Positions 16,944 through 51,949 of a stretch of 61,278 bases of DNA are shown here, piece after piece; position 1 is the stretch's first letter, and each line of letters opens with the position of its first letter. The notes under the pieces were generated by a model, which was not told the DNA's origin, ran no database searches, and saw only the letters and a program-made list of their open reading frames with translations. Made by a program: the position numbers and the translations under genes. Origin of the DNA: Prasinococcaceae sp. CCMP 1430 (lineage: Eukaryota > Plantae > Prasinodermophyta); contig RQSC01000020.1 in the NCBI GenBank assembly GCA_013416795.1, positions 142,535-203,812 on the forward strand, given 5' to 3'.

Positions 16944-17585
16944 NNNNNNNNNNNNNNNNNNNNNNNNNNNNNNNNNNNNNNNNNNNNNNNNNNNNNNNNN
17001 NNNNNNNNNNNNNNNNNNNNNNNNNNNNNNNNNNNNNNNNNNNNNNNNNNNNNNNNNNNNNNNNNNNNNNNNNNNNNNNNNNNNNNNNNNNNNNNNNNNN
17101 NNNNNNNNNNNNNNNNNNNNNNNNNNNNNNNNNNNNNNNNNNNNNNNNNNNNNNNNNNNNNNNNNNNNNNNNNNNNNNNNNNNNNNNNNNNNNNNNNNNN
17201 NNNNNNNNNNNNNNNNNNNNNNNNNNNNNNNNNNNNNNNNNNNNNNNNNNNNNNNNNNNNNNNNNNNNNNNNNNNNNNNNNNNNNNNNNNNNNNNNNNNN
17301 NNNNNNNNNNNNNNNNNNNNNNNNNNNNNNNNNNNNNNNNNNNNNNNNNNNNNNNNNNNNNNNNNNNNNNNNNNNNNNNNNNNNNNNNNNNNNNNNNNNN
17401 NNNNNNNNNNNNNNNNNNNNNNNNNNNNNNNNNNNNNNNNNNNNNNNNNNNNNNNNNNNNNNNNNNNNNNNNNNNNNNNNNNNNNNNNNNNNNNNNNNNN
17501 NNNNNNNNNNNNNNNNNNNNNNNNNNNNNNNNNNNNNNNNNNNNNNNNNNNNNNNNNNNNNNNNNNNNNNNNNNNNNNNNNNNNN
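16944..17585. other. Assembly gap (642 N)
   Basis: Run of N. It probably hides the divergent 5' ends of GMK and the purple acid phosphatase. Confidence 1.
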
Positions 17586-31253: not shown

Positions 31254-31335
31254 NNNNNNNNNNNNNNNNNNNNNNNNNNNNNNNNNNNNNNNNNNNNNNN
31301 NNNNNNNNNNNNNNNNNNNNNNNNNNNNNNNNNNN
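31254..31335. other. Assembly gap (82 N)
   Basis: Run of N between the divergent HSCB and LysM genes. Both start codons are missing. Confidence 1.
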
Positions 31336-43197: not shown

Positions 43198-44979
43198 TCA
43201 CAGGCAGCGCCCCCACAGCGACATAGGCCCGGGCTCATTTTGGAACACCTCCTCGTACCCGTCCACGTACCTCTTTGCAGGAAGCTCCTCTTCTCGACTT
43301 TCAAGCACCGCGTCTTGGCGCGCGTGCCGGTGCGCGGGCGCAGAGTGGAGTGAGGTGGGCGCGTTGGGCATTGTATTAGCGACACGACGTCGCTCCTCGC
43401 GAGCGCAAAAGTGCTGGCACGCGCACATGTGTGACTGCGTTGCACTCTCGACACGCACCACAGATGGAACCACCGTACATGACCGACCTATCCCAGCTCC
43501 CCGGCGCCCACGCAGTCGTCAGTCTTATCTCGAGCTCGCCAAAAATCTTCTCGACGCGCACGTCGTCCAATCCTTCTGTATCATCGAACGGATCTTCAAG
43601 ACCAATGGCAATGTTGAAGAGCCCCTGAGAGAGTTGCGAGAGCGCGGAAGCGTATGTCGCGCCGTGCAGAGCCACGAATCAGCGCCACAGCGGTGCGCTC
43701 TCCCTCTCTCTTTCTTTCTCTCTAGCGAGCTATCGGCTAGGGAAGCAATACAAATGGCGCGGTCCTTCAGCGCGCAAATGGCACGCGTTCTCACCTGCAT
43801 GGCCACCCCCGTAAAGATCGCCAGCGCGATAGCAAAGCCCAAGTTGGCCTGAAACGGCCACTGGGATGCCTCGACGCGCCCAGCTCCCGCGACCCAGGCA
43901 TAGTACGGGCCGATGAAAAATGGGTGCGTGAGGATGTAGAGCCTGCCAAATGCTCGCAGGCCTGTGGGCGTACGGTAGCCCTTGATGGCGCGGCATTGCT
44001 CGAACTCCTTCGTGAGCAACATGAGGTATTGATTCATGCGCGCGGCCTCATTTCCGGGCAATCCCACGGCCTTCATGCGCTCGACGGCCAGCGAGAGGCG
44101 CGACAGCTCGGCGTAGATCTCGGCGAGGCACCGCCGCTGCACTGGGCGAACGTGTTTCCGCATGCGCTGGCCACTGCGCGTGAACATGTGCTTGCTGCGG
44201 TTGGCGAGGGGCAGACGCAAGAAGTCGCGCATTGCCCGCGTCATGCGGATGAGGGTTTCTCGGACCTCAGCCACGTGTTGGTGCGCAGCAGCACCGCCTT
44301 CGTAGTATTCTGCAGCGGGCGACGACTTCTCCTCGCTGGCAGCGCGCGTGCAATCGACCCCTCCTTCACAGGCGCCGTCGTCGCCGCTCTTCCCGCGGGC
44401 GCCGGCGCCACGCTCCCCCTCGCCGCCGGCCTCGGCTGCTGCCTCCTTCTGATTTCCGTGCTGTGGGTAGCGAGGGGTGGTGGCGAGCAGCCTGCGCCCG
44501 ACGAAGTCCCCCTTGACTGGCCATGACCACGAGTTGTGCGCGAGGTAGAGATGAAAGACGAGCGACCTCAGATCGGCTAGCGCGGCGAGCGCTCTCTCGC
44601 GCCGCACGAAGGCGTAGCCTATGTTCGCGGTGATCGGAAACACTATGATGAACGAGAAGAAAGAGAGCGATAGCTTCGCAACCAGCGGTTCCTCGTCGGG
44701 ACGGTAGAAGAAGTAGAAGCACGTGGCGCCTGCTTGCAGCGAGCAGACGAAGATGGTCTCGGGGGTGATGAGGTGCGCGACCGCCACCTGTAGCGACACC
44801 CAGTACGTCAGCAGGGTCTCCCATACCGACCCCAGGGGTGAAGCACGAAGCAGCGCGGGCGTCGGCTGCGCGTCGTCCATGTCGGACTTCACCGAGGCCG
44901 TCGACAGCGTGGGCGCGCGCGGATGGGAAGCGCGTCGGTCGACGCCGGCCTCGCCGTTCGCGTCCCCGTCCGGCGCCAT
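43198..44979 (-). CDS. Bestrophin/UPF0187-like membrane protein; intron 43625-43794; 3' end uncertain
   Basis: TM helices, AFVRRERAL, YRTP.GLRAF, and GLFNIAIGLEDPFD (bestrophin-type EDPF motif). Confidence 0.65.
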
Positions 44980-45508
44980 TTCCCGCCGCGCGCCACAGGG
45001 TCGCGGCGTGGAGCGCGGGGCGCGACGCCGTCCTCATCTGAGGCGCCCGAGCGACGCGCGCTCGGCGGGTCCGCCCCGCGCGGGGCGTTGGGGGTGCGGG
45101 GCGGGGACGCGCTGTGGCGCCGCAGCACGCCGCTGCCAACGCCGCTGACGTGGCGCGCGGGTGCGCGCACCCGTCCTCTCCCCTCGCGAACGCCCGCCGG
45201 GCAAACTCGCGCGACAGTTGGCATTTGCCATTTCCACCAGCAACACAAGCACACCTACACCTTCAAGCACTTTACATTACCCCACGGGAGACTCCATACC
45301 ATCGATGCACCTGGCCTGCTCCCTTTCGTTTTGATAGCGACGGAGTCGCGAGCGCGCCAGCACGCCGTGGTGCGTTTGAGCGGGGTGCCAGAGGGCGAGG
45401 CGAGCGCGCGCGCGGGGGGAGGGGGGCTCAGCCTGAGGGGGGTCGCCCGAGCGGAAGGCGGGGGGAGAGAGAGGGGGGGGAGGCGAGCATGGGCGCGCGG
45501 CAGCCGCG

Positions 45509-48500
45509 ATGACGGACGCCGCGGCGCGAGGGCGCGCTGCGGGCGCAGCTGCTCTCCAACCCGCACAGCCCGGAGGAGTACCGGGTCAACGGCATCGTGC
45601 GGAACATGGACGAATGGTATGCCGCTTTCGGCGTGAAGCCCGGCGACAAGCTGTATTTGCCGCCCGAGGAACGGGTCCACGTCTGGTAAGCCAGCGGGAC
45701 AAAAGGAAAAAGGGGCGCCGGGATCCGATCCCTGCGCCCCTTTTCTTTGCTCCGACCATACATGCCGATGAAATAAAACATTCAAACCGAAATGGCGTCA
45801 TTTTCATCAGGCGACATTACAGACGGCGCGCACGCCGACGCCACGGCGGCGCCGCGGTCGCGCTCGCGGCAACGGCGGCGTTTGCGGCAGCAGTGGCGCT
45901 CGCCGCGGCGCCGCGCGTGATCGCAGCGCCGACGAACGTTGCCACAGAGGGTGTGCGCGTGGCTTCGAACGCCAACGAGCTGCAGGAGCTCATCGACGAC
46001 TCCGATGCAGGGGAGACGCTCGGCGTGAGCGCGTCATTTGCGCTCGACGGCGAGCCGCTGCACGTGACGCGCTCGTTGCGCATCGAAGGTGAGCGCGCAC
46101 GCGCCACCAGCTCCGGCGCCTCGTTTCCGGCGCACGCGCACGTCGCGCTAACCCCTCCTTCTGCCTCTCCGCGCCACCCATCGCGCGGCATGCGCTGCGG
46201 CGGCGACGGCGTGCGCGCGCGCACGCGCTCGCTTTCATGCGCGCGCCCGCGCGCCCGCACCGCACGTCTCAAGGGATCGGCCATGGCTGCAAGCAGCTCG
46301 TAGGCTTCTTCCTTGAGGACGACCGGTGCGTCGTTGACGCTGGGTCGCTTTCGCGCGTGATTGAGGTCGCAGAGGGGGTGACGCTCTCCCTGTGGGGAAT
46401 AGTGCTCGCCAACGGAAATGCCAGCGACGCCGACAACGGCGTGCATGCGGGCGATGGGGGGTGCGTGTTGGCAAGCGCTGCATCGATCGTGCTCATGGAC
46501 GGTGTCCTGGTGACGCATTGCGATGCCTCCGACGGCCGCGGCGGCGCTGTCTTTGCTGCGGGTGGCGCCGTCCTTCGCGCAGTCGACACCACATTTGCGC
46601 ACGCCCAATCGACGTTCGGCGGTGCGGTGTACCTTGACGGCAACGCCGAGGCGCGCCTGGCGCGCGCCGACGGCGACCGCCGCATCGATGCTGCCTACGT
46701 ACACATCGAGACTCTTTGCGTGGTTGCGAACAACACCGCGAGCGACACGGGCGGCGCAATTTTTGCCGTGGGCGCAGCGTATGTTTCCATCGCAGGCTGC
46801 GACGTGACAGGCAATTTGGCCTCGGAGGGCGGCGCATTCATGCTCGACACCGCGGCCGCCTTCGTGTACCGGTCGGTTCTTGCAAACAACACGGCCACGC
46901 AGGGCGCGGGCGGCGCCATATTCACCGGCGGAGACACCATTCTGCAGCTCCGCAAGGGCAACTCTGTCATCAACAACACTGCGGAGACGTATGGCGGCGG
47001 GATATTCGGCTGCGGCACGTGTGCCGTCGACGTCGAAGGCACGCTCTTCGAGAGCAACAGCGCAGGGATCGCTGGTGGTGGGGTGTACGCCGCGTCCGGG
47101 TGCGCTCCTAGTCTCATGGATCAAGACGGACTCTGCGACGATTCGACCGGCTGCACGCGATACGAGTGCCGGCTCAGTGGCAACGAGGCGCCGGCTGGCG
47201 GCGGGCTGTACGTCAGCGGGTCGCTGGCGCACAGCGCGCGTATCGCGCGATGCACCTTCTCGCACAACAACGCGACTGTGACGGATGGCGGGGCCATCTG
47301 GATTGGCCAGGGCGCGAACGTCAGCTTCCTCGACGGGCGCATCGAGGGCAATGCTGCGACTGGTCACGGCGGCGGTGTGTTTCTGGACGGCTCGGACTCG
47401 TCGCTCCTCCTGTCTCCCGACCCCGACCCCCCGCGTGAGAGCACGCTGGGCAACTCCCAGGCCGAGCTCACGATGCATGAACTCGTGGACGTGGGCCTCG
47501 CGCACCAGCCCGACGAGAGCTACGGGGCGCCAGAGGTGTACGACGCTTCGAATGGTGGCATCCTTGGTCCTCTGCTCCGAGGCTACTCCGAGCTCGAGCT
47601 CGCTACGCGCGTGTACAACAACTCCGCGGGGGGGTTCGGCGGGGGGCTGCGCGTCGGCGGGGGGTCACTGGTGGCGCTGAGCACGCGCTTCGAGGGAAAC
47701 TACGCGCGCTCGGGCGGCGGCGGCGTTCATCTCGCGGCAGACACTTCTGACTCGCTGCCGTCAGTCGCGGCGCTGTGGGGATGCAATTTCGTTTCGAATC
47801 GCGCCTCCCTCAATGGAGGCGGGGTGCACGCGAGCTCGGACTCGCGCCTCGTGTCGATTCACACCAACTTTTCCGCCAACGAGGCGAACGTGTATGGCGG
47901 CGCGCTGTATTCTGAGGCCGCTCACATGTACCCAAGTGTAGACGCGCGCTTCGGATTCGTCCTCGGCAACACTGCCAACAGCGGCGCTGGCATCGCGGTG
48001 GCCGGCGGGGCCTCGCACATCTTCCGTGTGACCATTACTGGCAACCAGGCGGACTCGTACGGCGGCGGCGTCCTCGCGATGCCCTTCGCTTCAATCACGC
48101 TGAACTCGAGTACCATGGTACACGAGGATGCGCCTAACTCAGCGAGCGATTCCGGGACGTCCGGCGATGGCGGCTGGGCCATGGCCGGCGGTGTCATTTT
48201 TAGATTCAATCAGAGCTCCAGCCCAGGCCATGGGGGCAACATAGACGGAGTCGAGACGGTGCGCTTTTGCGGGCCATGCGCGCCCGGACAGTTCGCTACT
48301 GGTGCGTGCACTGCCACCGAGGACGCCCCTTGCGGGCCGTGCGCGCCGTGTGTGGACGAGGACCACTTCATCTCGCGGGCGGGCGGCGTGCCGACAATGT
48401 TCGACGACACGTTGTGCGTGCCCTGCTCGGCTGCCTGTCCCGCGGGCGCGGTGATATATGCGCCCTGCCGCAGAGGCAGCCTCGTGTTGGCTGGCCAAGA

Positions 48501-50265
48501 TTTGGAGTGCGGTCCGCAGCCACTCAGGGCTGAGGGTAGTCAGGCGGATCCGCTGCCTCCCTATGGCGGGCACGCCGAGGTCTTGAGTGCCGCGAATACC
48601 GTACGCCCTCCTGACGCGCTGGACTCGGCAGCACCGCCGACAATCAACTTCATCCACCCTCGCTCTGGCCCCGTGGAGGGTGGCACGCTGATCACCATCG
48701 ACGGCGCCAACTTTCAGCGGCGCTTACACATTCGATGCCGCTTCGGCTCGGCCAATGAGCTCGACGAGGTGCGCGCCACGAGGGTGAGCGGCCAGCGCGT
48801 CGTGCTCTTCACACCTGCGCGCGACTACCCCACCACCGCTCTGGTGTCGTGCTCAAACGACGGCACGACCTGGAGCAATCCCCCGGTGAGCTCCGTGCAG
48901 GGCGGCGGCTCGTTCACGGTTTTCACGTTCGTGCACGCGGTGCCTGCGGGCATTTTCCACCTGGATAACACCACGGGCCCTTTCGAGGGCACCACAGTAG
49001 TGTCCATCAGCGTGGAGCCACCTGCGTACGGCAATAAGACGGACTGGGTCGATCCTGAGCTCCGCCAGTGGGAGTGGGAAAATGGTACCGAGGCACAACC
49101 CGCGCCCGTAGGCATCCCGCTCGCGAGGTTCCAGCCGAGCGAGCGGCTGCTGTGCATGTTTGGCGACAACGTGGTGCGGGCGAAGTGGCGGACCTACCAG
49201 AAGATTGAATGCACGGCCCCAGCGTACGATCGGAGCGCGCAAATCTCGGGCACGATGTCGTCCACAGTGGATGTTCAGGTGACCAACAACGCATTCCACT
49301 ACGTCAAGGTCGGAGAGTTCACCTACTTCCACGGGAGGCCCACGGTCAGGAACGTGTACACGCTCAACGACGCGGGCTCCTGGAAGGCGCGCGGCACGTT
49401 TGAAGGCAACACGGAGATGTTCATCAATGGCACGGGCTTCTTGCCTTCTGAGCGCCTCACTGCTCGGCTCGTCAAGTTTGTGCCTGAGGGCACCGAGTAC
49501 AAGTACATGAGGTGCTCGTACGACAGCGCAGAGCAGATTCGCTGCATTACGCCGCCGTGGGCACCGAAGAGCATCGAGCCGATGTTCTCCGGAGCATTTG
49601 ATCCGTGCTTCAAGGTCGCCGTCGACGTCTCGAACAATGGCGAAACGATGTGGAGCCTTCCAAGTGAGGAGCGATTTCTGTACGGCGACATCTACGTCTC
49701 TCTCTCAGGCAGCGACCTCTGGGGGGACGGGACTCCCAAATTGCCCTACCGAACGATCTCGCGCGCCATCATGGCCGCGAACAGCAACCCGCGCGCCCAT
49801 TGGGTATTGAGGTCGCGCAGTGGAGACACCGGCATGCTGTCCACGGGCCGCGAGGTGCGTGGCGTGGGCAGAGGCGGCGCTGGTAGGTACATCAACCGCG
49901 ATGTCATTCGACTCACGGATGGCATGTACCGCAACGGGCTGGGCTTCGACGGTCTGGAGCAGAACCTCATGCTCTCGCCGCACGGCAAGTTCATCGATAT
50001 CAAGCCGGTGAATCCAGGGATGGCGTACATCGACTGTGAGGACGACGCCTCCGACGATTGGACGCTGGGCGAGCTGAACGACGACCCCAACGCGCCCGCT
50101 GGTGAGACCAATGGGATCATCACGCTCACGGGCGTGGGTGTCGTGCGCTGCAGGCCCATGAATATCCTGGAGCACCTTGACTCGCACTCGCGCCCCAGCT
50201 GGTACGTCGAGGACGACGACGCTTCGGACTACAACGCGACGTCGAATGCGACTTCGAATCTCTAG
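45509..50265 (+). CDS. Large secreted protein: Pmp-like beta-helix repeats, TNFR-like Cys repeats, IPT/TIG domains and DUF1565-like motif; intron 46089-46273; start uncertain
   Basis: Signal-like AVALAATAAFAAAVALAAAP, many GGA(I/V)...N.A repeats, CGPCAPGQF...C...CGPC, PPTINFIHPRSGPVEGGTLITIDGANF, and IYVSLSGSDLWGDGT..LPYRTISRAI. Confidence 0.75.
45525..45689 (+). pseudogene. C-terminal fragment of a bacterial-type M13 (PepO/neprilysin-family) metallopeptidase
   Basis: Translation not shown in the ORF track: REGALRAQLLSNPHSPEEYRVNGIVRNMDEWYAAFGVKPGDKLYLPPEERVHVW*. An in-frame TGA lies upstream at 45510. Confidence 0.85.
45701..45748. terminator. Bacterial-style bidirectional Rho-independent terminator
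   Basis: AAAAGGGGCGC-C-GGGAT-CCG-ATCCC-T-GCGCCCCTTTT, flanked by A and T tracts, 12 nt after the M13 stop codon. Confidence 0.8.
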
Positions 50266-50415: not shown

Positions 50416-51538
50416 TCAGAGCTCCGACGCCGGCGTCGGCTTGGGCACGTAGATACCCTCCGTGGCCTTCCAATTCGAGTCGACCGAGTGCCCGCGCGAA
50501 CCCACCACCTCGAGTTGGCCTGAAATAGGCCGGCCGAAGCGGCGGCTGGTCATGGAGAGGTACGCATTCGTGGCCACGTGCTGAATGTGCACCTTGCTCT
50601 CCTGCTTCCACTTCGAGTTGGGGTCCATCACGAGGCGCCATACGTCGTTGGCGTCGCTGCGGAGGCGCATTCGCGCGACGAGCCGGCGTGTTGGTTGGCG
50701 AACGGTGCGCGAGCGAGTCAGAGCGCGCGCTCCCGCTGCAGGATCTGCAACGATGGCGCAAACACGCATCGAGGTGCAGGTGGGCGAGAGCGGGCGGCCG
50801 CGGAGGTCGCGCGCACCTGTTGTCGTGGTCGCCGTGACAGCTGACCTCCTGCTGGTTTGAGAGCGGGCTCTGGAAGTTGTGGGAGTGAAGCCACTTCTTG
50901 CTCGAGGCGTGCATGAGGCGGAACTCGCTGTTGTGCGTGAGCGGCTCGCCACTCTCGATGGAACTGCGCGCATCGGCGAGAGCGCGCGGGCGCCGATGGG
51001 TGCGTTGCGGTGGGGCGGGGCGTCGGGTTTGCGGATTAGGTGAGGCGTTGCGTAGGGGAGCAGGACGACAGAGCGCAAAAGCGGGGCCGGAAACGGGGGC
51101 AAGTGGGTGGGTGGGTGGGCGGGTCAGCGAGGCAGCATGCGCCGCGCGGTTGCGCTGCGCAGCCACCACCACAGGGGCAGCGCAGCGAGCACCGGCCCTC
51201 GTGAGCCGCGGATCAGCTGTTCAACACGTCCGCGACCAAAGTGCAGATTGGCGCGCGTCGGCCGCCGCTCACCTCCCCTCGACGGGCTTGATCATCCAGA
51301 GGTCCTCCTCGTCGCCTTCGTTGGCCGTGCCTGTCACGCTCTGCTGGCCGCTACCCGACCCGTACGAGATCTCGTGCGAGTGCAGGTTGAAGGCGTGCTG
51401 CGTGGAGGCGAGCTTGACGGCCGAGCCGTAGGTGACCAGGTGCCTTTCGAGCGCCGCGGCGGGCGAGGCCGCGGCGGCCACGAGCAGCGCCGCGACGGCC
51501 CCTGCAGCTGCCACTGCCCGCGCCGCCAGTCCCGCCAT
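50416..51538 (-). CDS. SDF2: Stromal cell-derived factor 2 (MIR-domain ER protein); introns 50964-51272 and 50657-50816
   Basis: Signal peptide, VTYGSAVKL...LHSHEISYGSGSGQQSVT, LHSHNFQSPLSNQQEVS, RFGRPISGQLEV and WKATEGIY. Confidence 0.95.
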
Positions 51539-51949
51539 CGCGCGCCCTGCCTGCCGCCCCGCCCAGCGCCAGCAGTGGCACCGCCCCGCAGACGCTCGCT
51601 CGCGCGCGCGCGCGATCGGCGCATGCCCGAGCCGAGGCCGGGGCGAGTCGGGCGGCAAGGCTTCGAATTGCTCGCCCGTGGTGAATTATTCTCAATTTAT
51701 TGATTGTCTATCACCACAGCTCTTTTTTATGAGGGCTTTGGCGAGGCGGATGGGGATGGAAAAGATCGGCGAGGCGGTGCGCGCTGAGTCACCGGCGCAC
51801 AGCAGCGCGGAGGGAGGGAGGGGGAAGGGGCGGGGAAGGGGGCGGGGGGCACACCCGGGTGCGAGCGCGCAGAAGCGTGAGTGAGGGCTGGTGGTCTGGC
51901 GGGTGTGGGGGTGCGCGGGGTGCGCGGGGTGCGCGGGCGATCGTCTCCG

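What the first reader, a model, noticed from the sequence alone, without database searches (positions are those of the whole stretch)
45509..45830. Bacterial DNA fragment (M13 peptidase 3' end plus intrinsic terminator) embedded in the 5' end of an algal gene
Seen: 45525-45689 encodes a Cys-free, bacterial-type PepO/M13 C-terminus (NPHSPEEYRVNGIVRNMDEWYAAFGVKPGDKLYLPPEERVHVW*), missing from the ORF track. It is followed by a textbook bidirectional Rho-independent terminator and an AT-rich tract with a GATGAAA/TTTCATC inverted repeat. The ~300-bp block is flanked by CGGCGCG on both sides (45522 and 45824; a common word here, so weak as a TSD). It is open in another frame, linking ATG 45509 (MTDAAAR) to the signal peptide of the large secreted protein. 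Established: eukaryotic nuclei do not use such terminators, and animal neprilysins end in C..W. Inference: either a very recent bacterium-to-alga DNA insertion caught before decay, possibly exonised, or a chimeric join with a co-cultured bacterium.
Basis: partly seen in the sequence, partly recalled or inferred. Interest (0 to 1): 0.8.

Follow-up and report, generated by a model that had tools for sequence, protein, structure and literature searches.

The report
Bacterial patch: reference assembly artefact
A 302-base piece of this algal reference sequence really is bacterial DNA (the tail of a Sphingomonas-type peptidase gene plus its terminator), but independent sequencing of the alga shows 74 other, GC-only bases at that spot, so it is almost certainly an assembly error and not a gene transfer.

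Summary
Window 45525-45689 encodes the last 54 residues and stop of a bacterial M13 peptidase (Pfam E 3e-11). The closest kin are Sphingomonadales (96% protein, about 85% DNA identity). A strong hairpin with a T-run follows.

The "fresh insertion" reading fails:
- In two independent DNA runs of the same organism, contigs match the flanks with 0 mismatches but carry 74 other letters in place of window 45546-45847.
- All 17 DNA runs hold 0.93 of the sampled words, which fits all of them lacking the block.
- Two wild-population contigs leave the window at the same base (45847/45848) and show GGC-type repeats there. Seven more stop at or just before that tract.

The left joint lies in 21 bases that the alga and the bacterial gene share. 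The last 38 bases of the block match another algal locus. No RNA contig covers the block.

The organism is most likely Prasinoderma coloniale CCMP1413, which is haploid. The 2024 runs fit a mutation-accumulation study of that same strain.

Verdict: a patchwork error in the reference at a GC-only tract that is hard to sequence. It is not a real feature. First-stage notes list at least seven similar short bacterial fragments in this genome. None has been checked, and all need the same test.

The parts
45546..45847 (.). The 302-base block that exists only in this assembly. Independent DNA of the same organism has 74 other letters here.
   Evidence: X1 contig 1 (19,658 nt, depth 50.5) matches 45040-45545 and 45848-48000 with 0 other letters and has 74 letters between them. 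The two X4 contigs overhang the joints by 80 and 24 letters, and 80 + 24 - 30 = 74. Depth is 0 over 45608-45741 in all four runs; wild contigs L081 and L082 diverge from the window exactly at 45847/45848.
45525..45689 (+). 3' end of a bacterial M13 (PepO/Zmp1-type) metallopeptidase gene: the last 54 codons plus the TAA stop. There is no catalytic motif; it is a fragment only.
   Evidence: Differences from the closest loci are mostly at third codon positions (15-22 of 24-28 differing bases; 2-8 amino-acid changes).
45525..45545 (.). A 21-base word that fits both the algal locus and the bacterial gene. It is the left joint of the chimera.
   Evidence: The algal contigs match up to 45545. Homology to bacterial M13 genes starts at 45524-45525. 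Relatives L005 and L006 differ from this word at only 1 of 21 bases.
45705..45748 (+). Bacterial-type intrinsic terminator: an A-run, a GC-rich hairpin (GC stem 45712-45740), then TTTTCTTT.
   Evidence: -28.5 kcal/mol, z -4.45. Not called by the simple scanner.
45749..45809 (.). AT-richer spacer with the GATGAAA/TTTCATC inverted repeat. Presumed to be bacterial intergenic DNA; the source was not found.
   Evidence: No match in 80 related bacterial loci, in plasmids, or in metagenome scans for the adjacent terminator.
45810..45847 (.). The last 38 bases of the block. They match another locus of the same alga, not this locus.
   Evidence: 45810-45866 matches separate contigs at algal depth with 2 mismatches: X1 record 3 (depth 56.8), X4 record 13 (83.9) and RNA contig X19 record 10 (depth 205.6, its positions 12-68). 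The true locus shares only 45848-45866 with that stretch.
45509..46088 (+). Predicted exon 1 of the large secreted beta-helix/TIG protein as it reads in this assembly. The true exon is 228 bases shorter: ATG 45509, an Arg/Gly-rich stretch, then the signal peptide.
   Evidence: Homolog exon 1 in L085 (4477-4713) ends VRVEG before a GT donor, as the window does at 46088/46089. The last bases before 45848 in L081 read GGGRRRRRAR in this frame.
46089..46273 (+). Predicted intron (GT...AG) between exon 1 and the long exon.
   Evidence: Reading, compared with the L085 exon junction ...VRVEG|IGHGCERLVGFF.
46274..50265 (+). Long exon of the algal surface protein (right-handed beta-helix with Chlam_PMP repeats, a Cys-rich region, IPT/TIG domains).
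   Evidence: Wild contigs are 98-99% identical.
45025..45039 (.). A second place where the assembly differs from independent DNA: these 15 bases are replaced by 50 letters.
   Evidence: both X1 and X4. Wild contig L095 also departs from the window here.

Best explanation
Window 45546-45847 is not part of the alga's genome. It is a patchwork error in the reference assembly.

The true sequence here is a tract of about 74 bases made only of G and C (GGC-type repeats). It codes for the Arg/Gly-rich start of a signal peptide in exon 1 of a large surface protein. Such a tract is hard to sequence and assemble.

At this weak spot the consensus was filled with foreign reads:
- About 264 bases come from a Sphingomonas-like contaminant (the end of an M13 peptidase gene, its terminator and some spacer). 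They are joined through a 21-base word that alga and bacterium happen to share.
- Another 38 bases come from a different algal locus. They rejoin the true locus through a shared 19-base stretch.

Shown: the block is absent and the 74-letter form is present in independent DNA, the breakpoint is the same in wild contigs, and the joints lie in shared words. Inferred: which step made the error. Short-read polishing or patching of the long-read draft is my best guess. In-vitro template switching during library preparation would leave the same signature.
For: 1; in DNA runs X1 and X4, contigs match 44000-45024, 45040-45545 and 45848-48000 with 0 other letters. X1 bridges the site with 74 letters instead of 302. 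The two X4 contig ends fit the same 74-letter form. Depth over 45608-45741 is 0 in all four runs, although the alga stands at about 50x and 90x.
2; all 17 DNA runs hold 0.93 of the sampled words. Losing the words that touch the 302-base block and the 15-base site predicts about 0.92.
3; nine wild contigs (Tara metagenome assemblies and Logan; 98-99% identical downstream) all stop within 32 bases upstream of 45848. The two that reach past it (L081, L082) read ...GGCGGCGGCGGCGCGCGCGG before 45848, not the window's sequence.
4; bacterial homology begins at 45524-45525, while the algal contig still matches to 45545, so the two sources overlap by 21 bases.
5; chance sharing of such words is common. 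There were 34 shared 18-mers and 2 shared 20-mers between 61 kb of alga and 453 kb of Sphingomonad-type DNA. Scaled to whole genomes, that is thousands of shared 20-21-mers.
6; 45810-45866 matches another algal locus, so the block has at least two sources.
7; 15-22 of the 24-28 differing bases against the closest relatives are at third codon positions, so the fragment evolved as a working bacterial gene until very recently.
8; the neighbouring gene is 98% identical to Prasinoderma coloniale PRCOL_00006401.
9. PMC7455551: the reference is a long-read draft polished with short reads, contamination was screened only at contig level, and the raw data are not in SRA.
10. PMC11884799: the genome is haploid, and mutation-accumulation lines of the same strain, CCMP1413, were sequenced at JGI. 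That fits the 17 runs of 2024 filed under separate studies.
11; first-stage notes list at least seven more short bacterial fragments (123-673 letters) and a nuclear/plastid junction in this genome. These are unchecked leads.
Against: - The original reads behind the assembly could not be examined, so the faulty step is not shown.
- Logan contigs show presence, not absence, and drop rare variants.
- The link between the coded runs and the CCMP1413 mutation-accumulation study is inferred from year, study structure and zero mismatches. It is not stated by the tool.
- The published reference culture was reported as axenic (PMC7455551), so the source of bacterial reads is unexplained. Reagent or cross-library contamination is assumed.
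- The window contains N runs, which the published assembly method does not obviously produce, so the exact assembly version and its processing are unknown.
- The exact bacterial source was not found, so the 21-base overlap is inferred from relatives.
Confidence: 0.9

Rival explanations
1. A real insertion, but private to the single-cell-derived axenic subclone that was used for the reference. A break in the fragile GC-only tract would have been repaired by capturing a piece of bacterial DNA plus a piece of another locus (template switching at microhomology). Other cultures of the strain and the wild population would then lack it.
For: The reference culture was re-cloned from single cells out of a stock that had carried bacteria (PMC7455551). 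The block is flanked by shared words, as microhomology-mediated repair would also leave. The fragment is undecayed.
Against: Overlaps of 21 and 19 bases are far longer than usual repair microhomology and fit overlap or k-mer joining. The block has at least two sources. It sits exactly where every short-read assembly breaks. The closest kin are soil and plant Sphingomonas, not marine associates. Several similar fragments are noted across the genome; that many private insertions in one subclone are unlikely. No RNA covers the block.
Confidence: 0.06
2. A polymorphic or minority allele within the strain. The block exists in some cells or copies, and the contig builders dropped it as the rarer path.
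For: Logan contigs drop rare variants (tool note). The X4 contigs break inside the tract.
Against: The genome is reported haploid and homozygous (PMC7455551, PMC11884799). All 17 runs show the same 0.93 share; a mixed state would be expected to give some runs that keep the block. The lines passed single-cell bottlenecks (PMC11884799), which would have fixed the block in some of them.
Confidence: 0.03
3. A fixed horizontal transfer in the species that has been exonised into the 5' end of the surface-protein gene.
For: The frame from ATG 45509 is open through the block.
Against: Same-strain DNA and wild contigs lack the block. The open frame follows from 302 - 74 being a multiple of 3. There is no RNA coverage. 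The existing gene model starts inside the long exon. The homolog in L085 has a short, ordinary signal-peptide exon.
Confidence: 0.01

Closest known systems
Contaminant-derived chimeric patches in eukaryotic reference assemblies (false horizontal gene transfer calls, as in the tardigrade Hypsibius dujardini controversy; recalled from my own knowledge)
   Same: Undecayed bacterial sequence inside a eukaryotic assembly, absent from independent sequencing of the same organism. It looks like recent gene transfer.
   Different: Here it is not a whole contaminant contig. It is a 302-base patch inside a chromosome-scale sequence, joined through shared 19-21-base GC-rich words, so contig-level decontamination (as used in PMC7455551) cannot catch it.
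Bacterial M13 metallopeptidases (PepO; Mycobacterium tuberculosis Zmp1, PDB 3zuk/7k1v)
   Same: The 54 encoded residues align to the extreme C-terminus, ending ...RVxxW. Annotated M13 genes on Sphingomonadales plasmids match at 72-76% DNA identity.
   Different: Only about 8% of the protein is present. There is no zinc-binding motif, no N-terminal domain and no start. It is a gene fragment with no possible enzyme activity.
Genuine insertions of foreign or organellar DNA at nuclear double-strand breaks (NUMT/NUPT-like capture)
   Same: A short foreign fragment in a nuclear gene region with microhomology at the joints.
   Different: Real insertions are present in independent DNA of the same strain. 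This one is not. It also replaces a hard-to-sequence tract instead of being added to intact sequence.

Membership tests
Peptidase family M13 (gene fragment) | Significant match to the Peptidase_M13 catalytic-domain profile | tested here: met
   Pfam PF01431, E 3.1e-11, profile positions 160-205 of 205. PDB Zmp1/PepO, E 2e-11 to 2e-8.
Peptidase family M13 (functional gene) | Full-length protein of about 650-700 residues with the zinc-binding motif and the N-terminal domain | tested here: not met
   Bacterial homology starts at 45524-45525 and covers only the last 54 codons. The sequence upstream is unrelated to bacterial genes that are conserved there.
Intrinsic (Rho-independent) terminator | GC-rich hairpin directly followed by a T-run, placed just after a stop codon | tested here: met
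   -28.5 kcal/mol, z -4.45, tail TTTTCTTT, 22 bases after the TAA. The simple scanner did not call it. Function cannot be tested here.
Real bacterium-to-eukaryote DNA insertion | Present at the same site in independent DNA of the same strain | tested here: not met
   X1 and X4 contigs carry 74 other letters. Block depth is 0. All 17 runs hold 0.93 of the words.
Real bacterium-to-eukaryote DNA insertion | Present in the natural population, or an intact empty site otherwise | tested here: not met
   Wild contigs L081 and L082 read GGC-type repeats before 45848. No wild contig holds the block. The block replaces 74 bases instead of sitting in an intact empty site.
Real bacterium-to-eukaryote DNA insertion | Target-site duplication or other integration signature | tested here: not met
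   CGGCGCG is a common word (78 copies on the + strand) and does not lie at the true joints.
Real bacterium-to-eukaryote DNA insertion | Transcribed as part of the host gene (exonised) | tested here: inconclusive
   The RNA contigs of X18 and X19 have no coverage from 45072 to 45741, but they cover none of the host gene either.
Assembly chimera or mis-patch | Joints fall in words shared by the joined sources | tested here: met
   Left joint: 21 bases fit both sources. Right joint: 45848-45866 is shared between the true locus and the other algal locus. Such words are common by chance.
Assembly chimera or mis-patch | Sits at a place that is hard to sequence or assemble | tested here: met
   All nine wild contigs and the X4 contigs break at the GC-only tract.
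Assembly chimera or mis-patch | Not supported by the original reads of the assembly | not testable with these tools
   The raw data are at CNGB (CNP0000924; PMC7455551), not among the runs served here.

The most novel reading that the evidence does not exclude
The block is a true insertion that arose in the single-cell subclone sequenced for the reference. A break in a fragile GGC-repeat tract would have been repaired by template switching onto bacterial DNA present in the nucleus and onto another chromosome locus. It would then be one of several such captures in this clone. That would be direct observation of bacterial DNA entering a green-lineage nuclear genome within a few years of culture.
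Probability: 0.05. Interest if true: 0.7.

Novelty: not a real feature. Interest (0 to 1): 0.12.

Why it matters
As biology it is ordinary: an artefact. As a warning it has some practical weight.
- This genome (most likely Prasinoderma coloniale) is the reference for a deep branch of green plants. It has been used to argue about bacterial gene transfer and about which pathways are missing.
- Short bacterial patches inside chromosome-scale sequences escape contig-level decontamination. They can create false transfer calls, false exons and false reading frames.
- First-stage notes list at least seven more such fragments in this genome. One is a thiE piece, in a genome whose lack of thiamine synthesis genes was cited as proof that the assembly is free of contamination (PMC7455551).
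- The same cheap test used here (contigs from same-strain resequencing) can settle all of them.

Tried and rejected
- **Finding the exact bacterial source.** Two metagenome scans, one for the terminator 29-mer and one for the stop codon plus a variable gap plus the first bases of the terminator, both found nothing. GTDB species representatives reach only about 85% DNA identity. Plasmids match only the coding part, at 72-76%. The non-coding part of the block has no match in the 80 related loci. The right end of the bacterial piece is therefore set only by where the other algal locus begins to match (45810).
- **Reading the 74 true letters.**
  - Exact look-ups of the window's ORFs, and later of P0081, found nothing.
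  - Partial ORFs of wild contigs are not in the collection.
  - A protein search with the exon-1 ORF found nothing.
  - Every wild contig fetched stops at the tract, and the one coming from the left ends near 45433.
  - Only the last 32 letters, from a wild allele, could be read.
- **Rfam:** nothing meaningful.
- **Organism.** I first guessed a pelagophyte, from the diatom-like kin of the neighbouring bestrophin-type gene and two paper searches. I rejected that guess: GC 63% and a gapless assembly do not fit Pelagomonas, and a cluster look-up named Prasinoderma coloniale.
- **Target-site duplication.** Rejected; see the observation check.

Full report
**What is in the sequence**

Window 45525-45689 translates, in one frame, to the last 54 residues and stop of an M13 metallopeptidase. 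Several results support this:
- Pfam Peptidase_M13 matches its positions 160-205 of 205 at E 3.1e-11.
- The peptide aligns to the extreme C-terminus of the solved bacterial enzymes Zmp1 and PepO.
- A scan of one genome per bacterial species found 410 loci that encode kin. The best are a Sphingomonadales MAG (96% protein identity) and Sphingomonas mali (94%).
- At DNA level the best identity is about 85%.
- Of the 24-28 differing bases against the five closest loci, 15-22 lie at third codon positions, with only 2-8 amino-acid changes. The fragment therefore evolved as a working bacterial gene until very recently.

Twenty-two bases after the stop lies a hairpin with a T-run (-28.5 kcal/mol, z -4.45). 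After that comes an AT-richer spacer carrying the GATGAAA/TTTCATC inverted repeat.

**Where the bacterial likeness begins**

In alignments to the relatives, homology starts at 45524-45525. The sequence upstream is unrelated to the strongly conserved bacterial coding sequence.

**The decisive test**

Seventeen DNA runs of one organism each hold 0.93 of the sampled words of window 43500-48500. I laid the contigs of two of them, from different studies, together with two RNA runs, on 44000-48000.
- In X1, a single 19.7-kb contig at depth 50 matches 44000-45024, 45040-45545 and 45848-48000 without one mismatch. It has 74 letters where the window has the 302 bases 45546-45847.
- In X4, one contig runs 80 letters past 45545 and another starts 24 letters before 45848. 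With the 30-base overlap of a 31-mer graph, that is the same 74-letter form.
- Nothing in either run matches 45608-45741, although the alga stands at about 50x and 90x.
- The share of 0.93 is what one expects if all 17 runs lack the block and the small 15-base site at 45025-45039. This last step is inference from arithmetic.

**Wild populations agree**

Near-identical proteins of the downstream gene led to nine contigs, seven from Tara metagenome assemblies and two from Logan. They are 98-99% identical to the window from 45848 onward. All of them stop within 32 bases upstream of 45848. The two that extend past it read GGC-type repeats there and diverge from the window at exactly 45847/45848. 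The true sequence is therefore a GC-only tract that breaks every short-read assembly. In the gene's frame, the last bases before 45848 encode GGGRRRRRAR, directly before the hydrophobic core of the signal peptide.

**Anatomy of the block**

- *Left joint.* The algal contig still matches up to 45545, while the bacterial likeness has already begun at 45525. So 21 bases fit both sources.
- *Right end.* The stretch 45810-45866 matches, with 2 mismatches, separate contigs at algal depth in both DNA runs, and also the 5' end of an abundant RNA contig. The last 38 bases of the block therefore come from another algal locus, which shares 45848-45866 with the true locus.
- *Overall.* The block is a patchwork of at least two sources stitched at shared words.
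- *Are such words plentiful?* Between this 61-kb window and 453 kb of Sphingomonad-type DNA I counted 34 shared 18-mers and 2 shared 20-mers. Scaled to whole genomes, that is thousands of shared 20-21-mers.

**The open frame and the flanking repeat**

The frame from ATG 45509 stays open through the block. The 74-letter form keeps the same frame, since 302 - 74 = 228 bases, which is 76 codons. The open frame therefore gives no support for exon use. CGGCGCG occurs 78 times on the + strand of the window and is not at the true joints.

**The host gene**

It encodes a large secreted protein with a right-handed beta-helix, a Cys-rich region and IPT/TIG domains. By comparison with a 58%-identical homolog whose first exon encodes a short signal peptide and ends VRVEG before a GT, I read the gene as follows:
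- exon 1: 45509-46088, which is 228 bases too long in this assembly;
- intron: 46089-46273;
- long exon: from 46274.

The existing gene model in EukProt starts at an internal Met of the long exon and lacks exon 1. RNA contigs cover the neighbouring minus-strand gene up to 44978, but neither the block nor this gene. Transcription of the block is therefore unsupported, though not formally excluded.

**Which genome this is**

The neighbouring ORF is 98% identical to Prasinoderma coloniale PRCOL_00006401, and the window's GC fits that genome's 69.8% (PMC7455551).
- The reference for strain CCMP1413 was built from long reads, polished with short reads and screened for bacteria only at contig level. 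The culture was reported axenic, and the raw data are at CNGB (PMC7455551).
- A later mutation-accumulation study sequenced many lines of the same strain at JGI and describes the genome as haploid (PMC11884799). That fits 17 runs of 2024 in separate studies with zero mismatches to the window; the link is my inference.
- A haploid genome and single-cell bottlenecks make a hidden second allele very unlikely.

**Mechanism**

At a tract where reads are scarce, the consensus was patched with foreign reads that shared a short word with the flank. The patched piece is of short-read or read-pair size. I cannot show which program or library step did it. The N runs in the window are not explained by the published method, so the processing history of this assembly version is unknown. 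In-vitro template switching on a stalled product would leave the same signature.

**Other notes of this scan**

First-stage notes on other parts of this genome list bacterial fragments of 123-673 letters inside or next to algal genes (thiE, SEL1, mltA-smr, sdhA, a heavy-metal operon piece, carB, trbL) and a sharp nuclear/plastid junction. I could not test them. They are leads pointing to a systematic problem, and each can be tested as this one was.

**Verdict**

The sequence feature is real in the file. The remaining chance, about 5%, is a true insertion private to the sequenced subclone.

Noticed in passing
window 45025-45039: A second discrepancy. In both DNA runs these 15 bases are replaced by 50 other letters. 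Wild contig L095 also departs from the window here (about 74 window bases missing). It is either intergenic indel variation or another small consensus error.
   Followed up: partly
window 45509-46273: The existing gene model for the large beta-helix/TIG protein (EukProt member P0069, 1256 aa) starts at an internal Met. A signal-peptide exon (ATG 45509 to 46088) and a 185-base intron seem to be missing from it. A homolog in L085 has the same two-exon start.
   Followed up: partly
window 45810-45866: This stretch matches another locus of the same alga with 2 mismatches. In RNA run X19 it lies at positions 12-68 of a 1270-nt contig of high depth (205.6), i.e. near the 5' end of an abundant transcript. 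In the window's frame it encodes an Arg-rich stretch like a signal-peptide start, so it may be a paralog's 5' end.
   Followed up: no
window 14722; 16944-17585; 31254-31335: There are N runs of 1, 642 and 82 bases, flanked by very GC-rich sequence. The published long-read assembly method does not obviously produce gaps, so this assembly version has had other processing.
   Followed up: no
window 45848 and upstream (L081-L084, L090-L094): All nine wild-population contigs that cover the downstream gene end within 32 bases of the same GC-only tract. It is a universal short-read assembly breakpoint.
   Followed up: yes
window about 50426-50480 and 51867-51888: Wild contigs L081 and L082 align to the window in two pieces here, with about 100 and 195 unaligned letters and overlapping window coordinates. 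That suggests repeat-number or indel differences between the reference and wild alleles.
   Followed up: no
window 43525-44979 (- strand): The neighbouring gene is bestrophin-like (protein atlas: Bestrophin_2 clusters). RNA contigs end at 44974-44978, so the first ATG of the long ORF (44979) is probably not the start codon. One wild contig has an ORF 69 codons longer.
   Followed up: no
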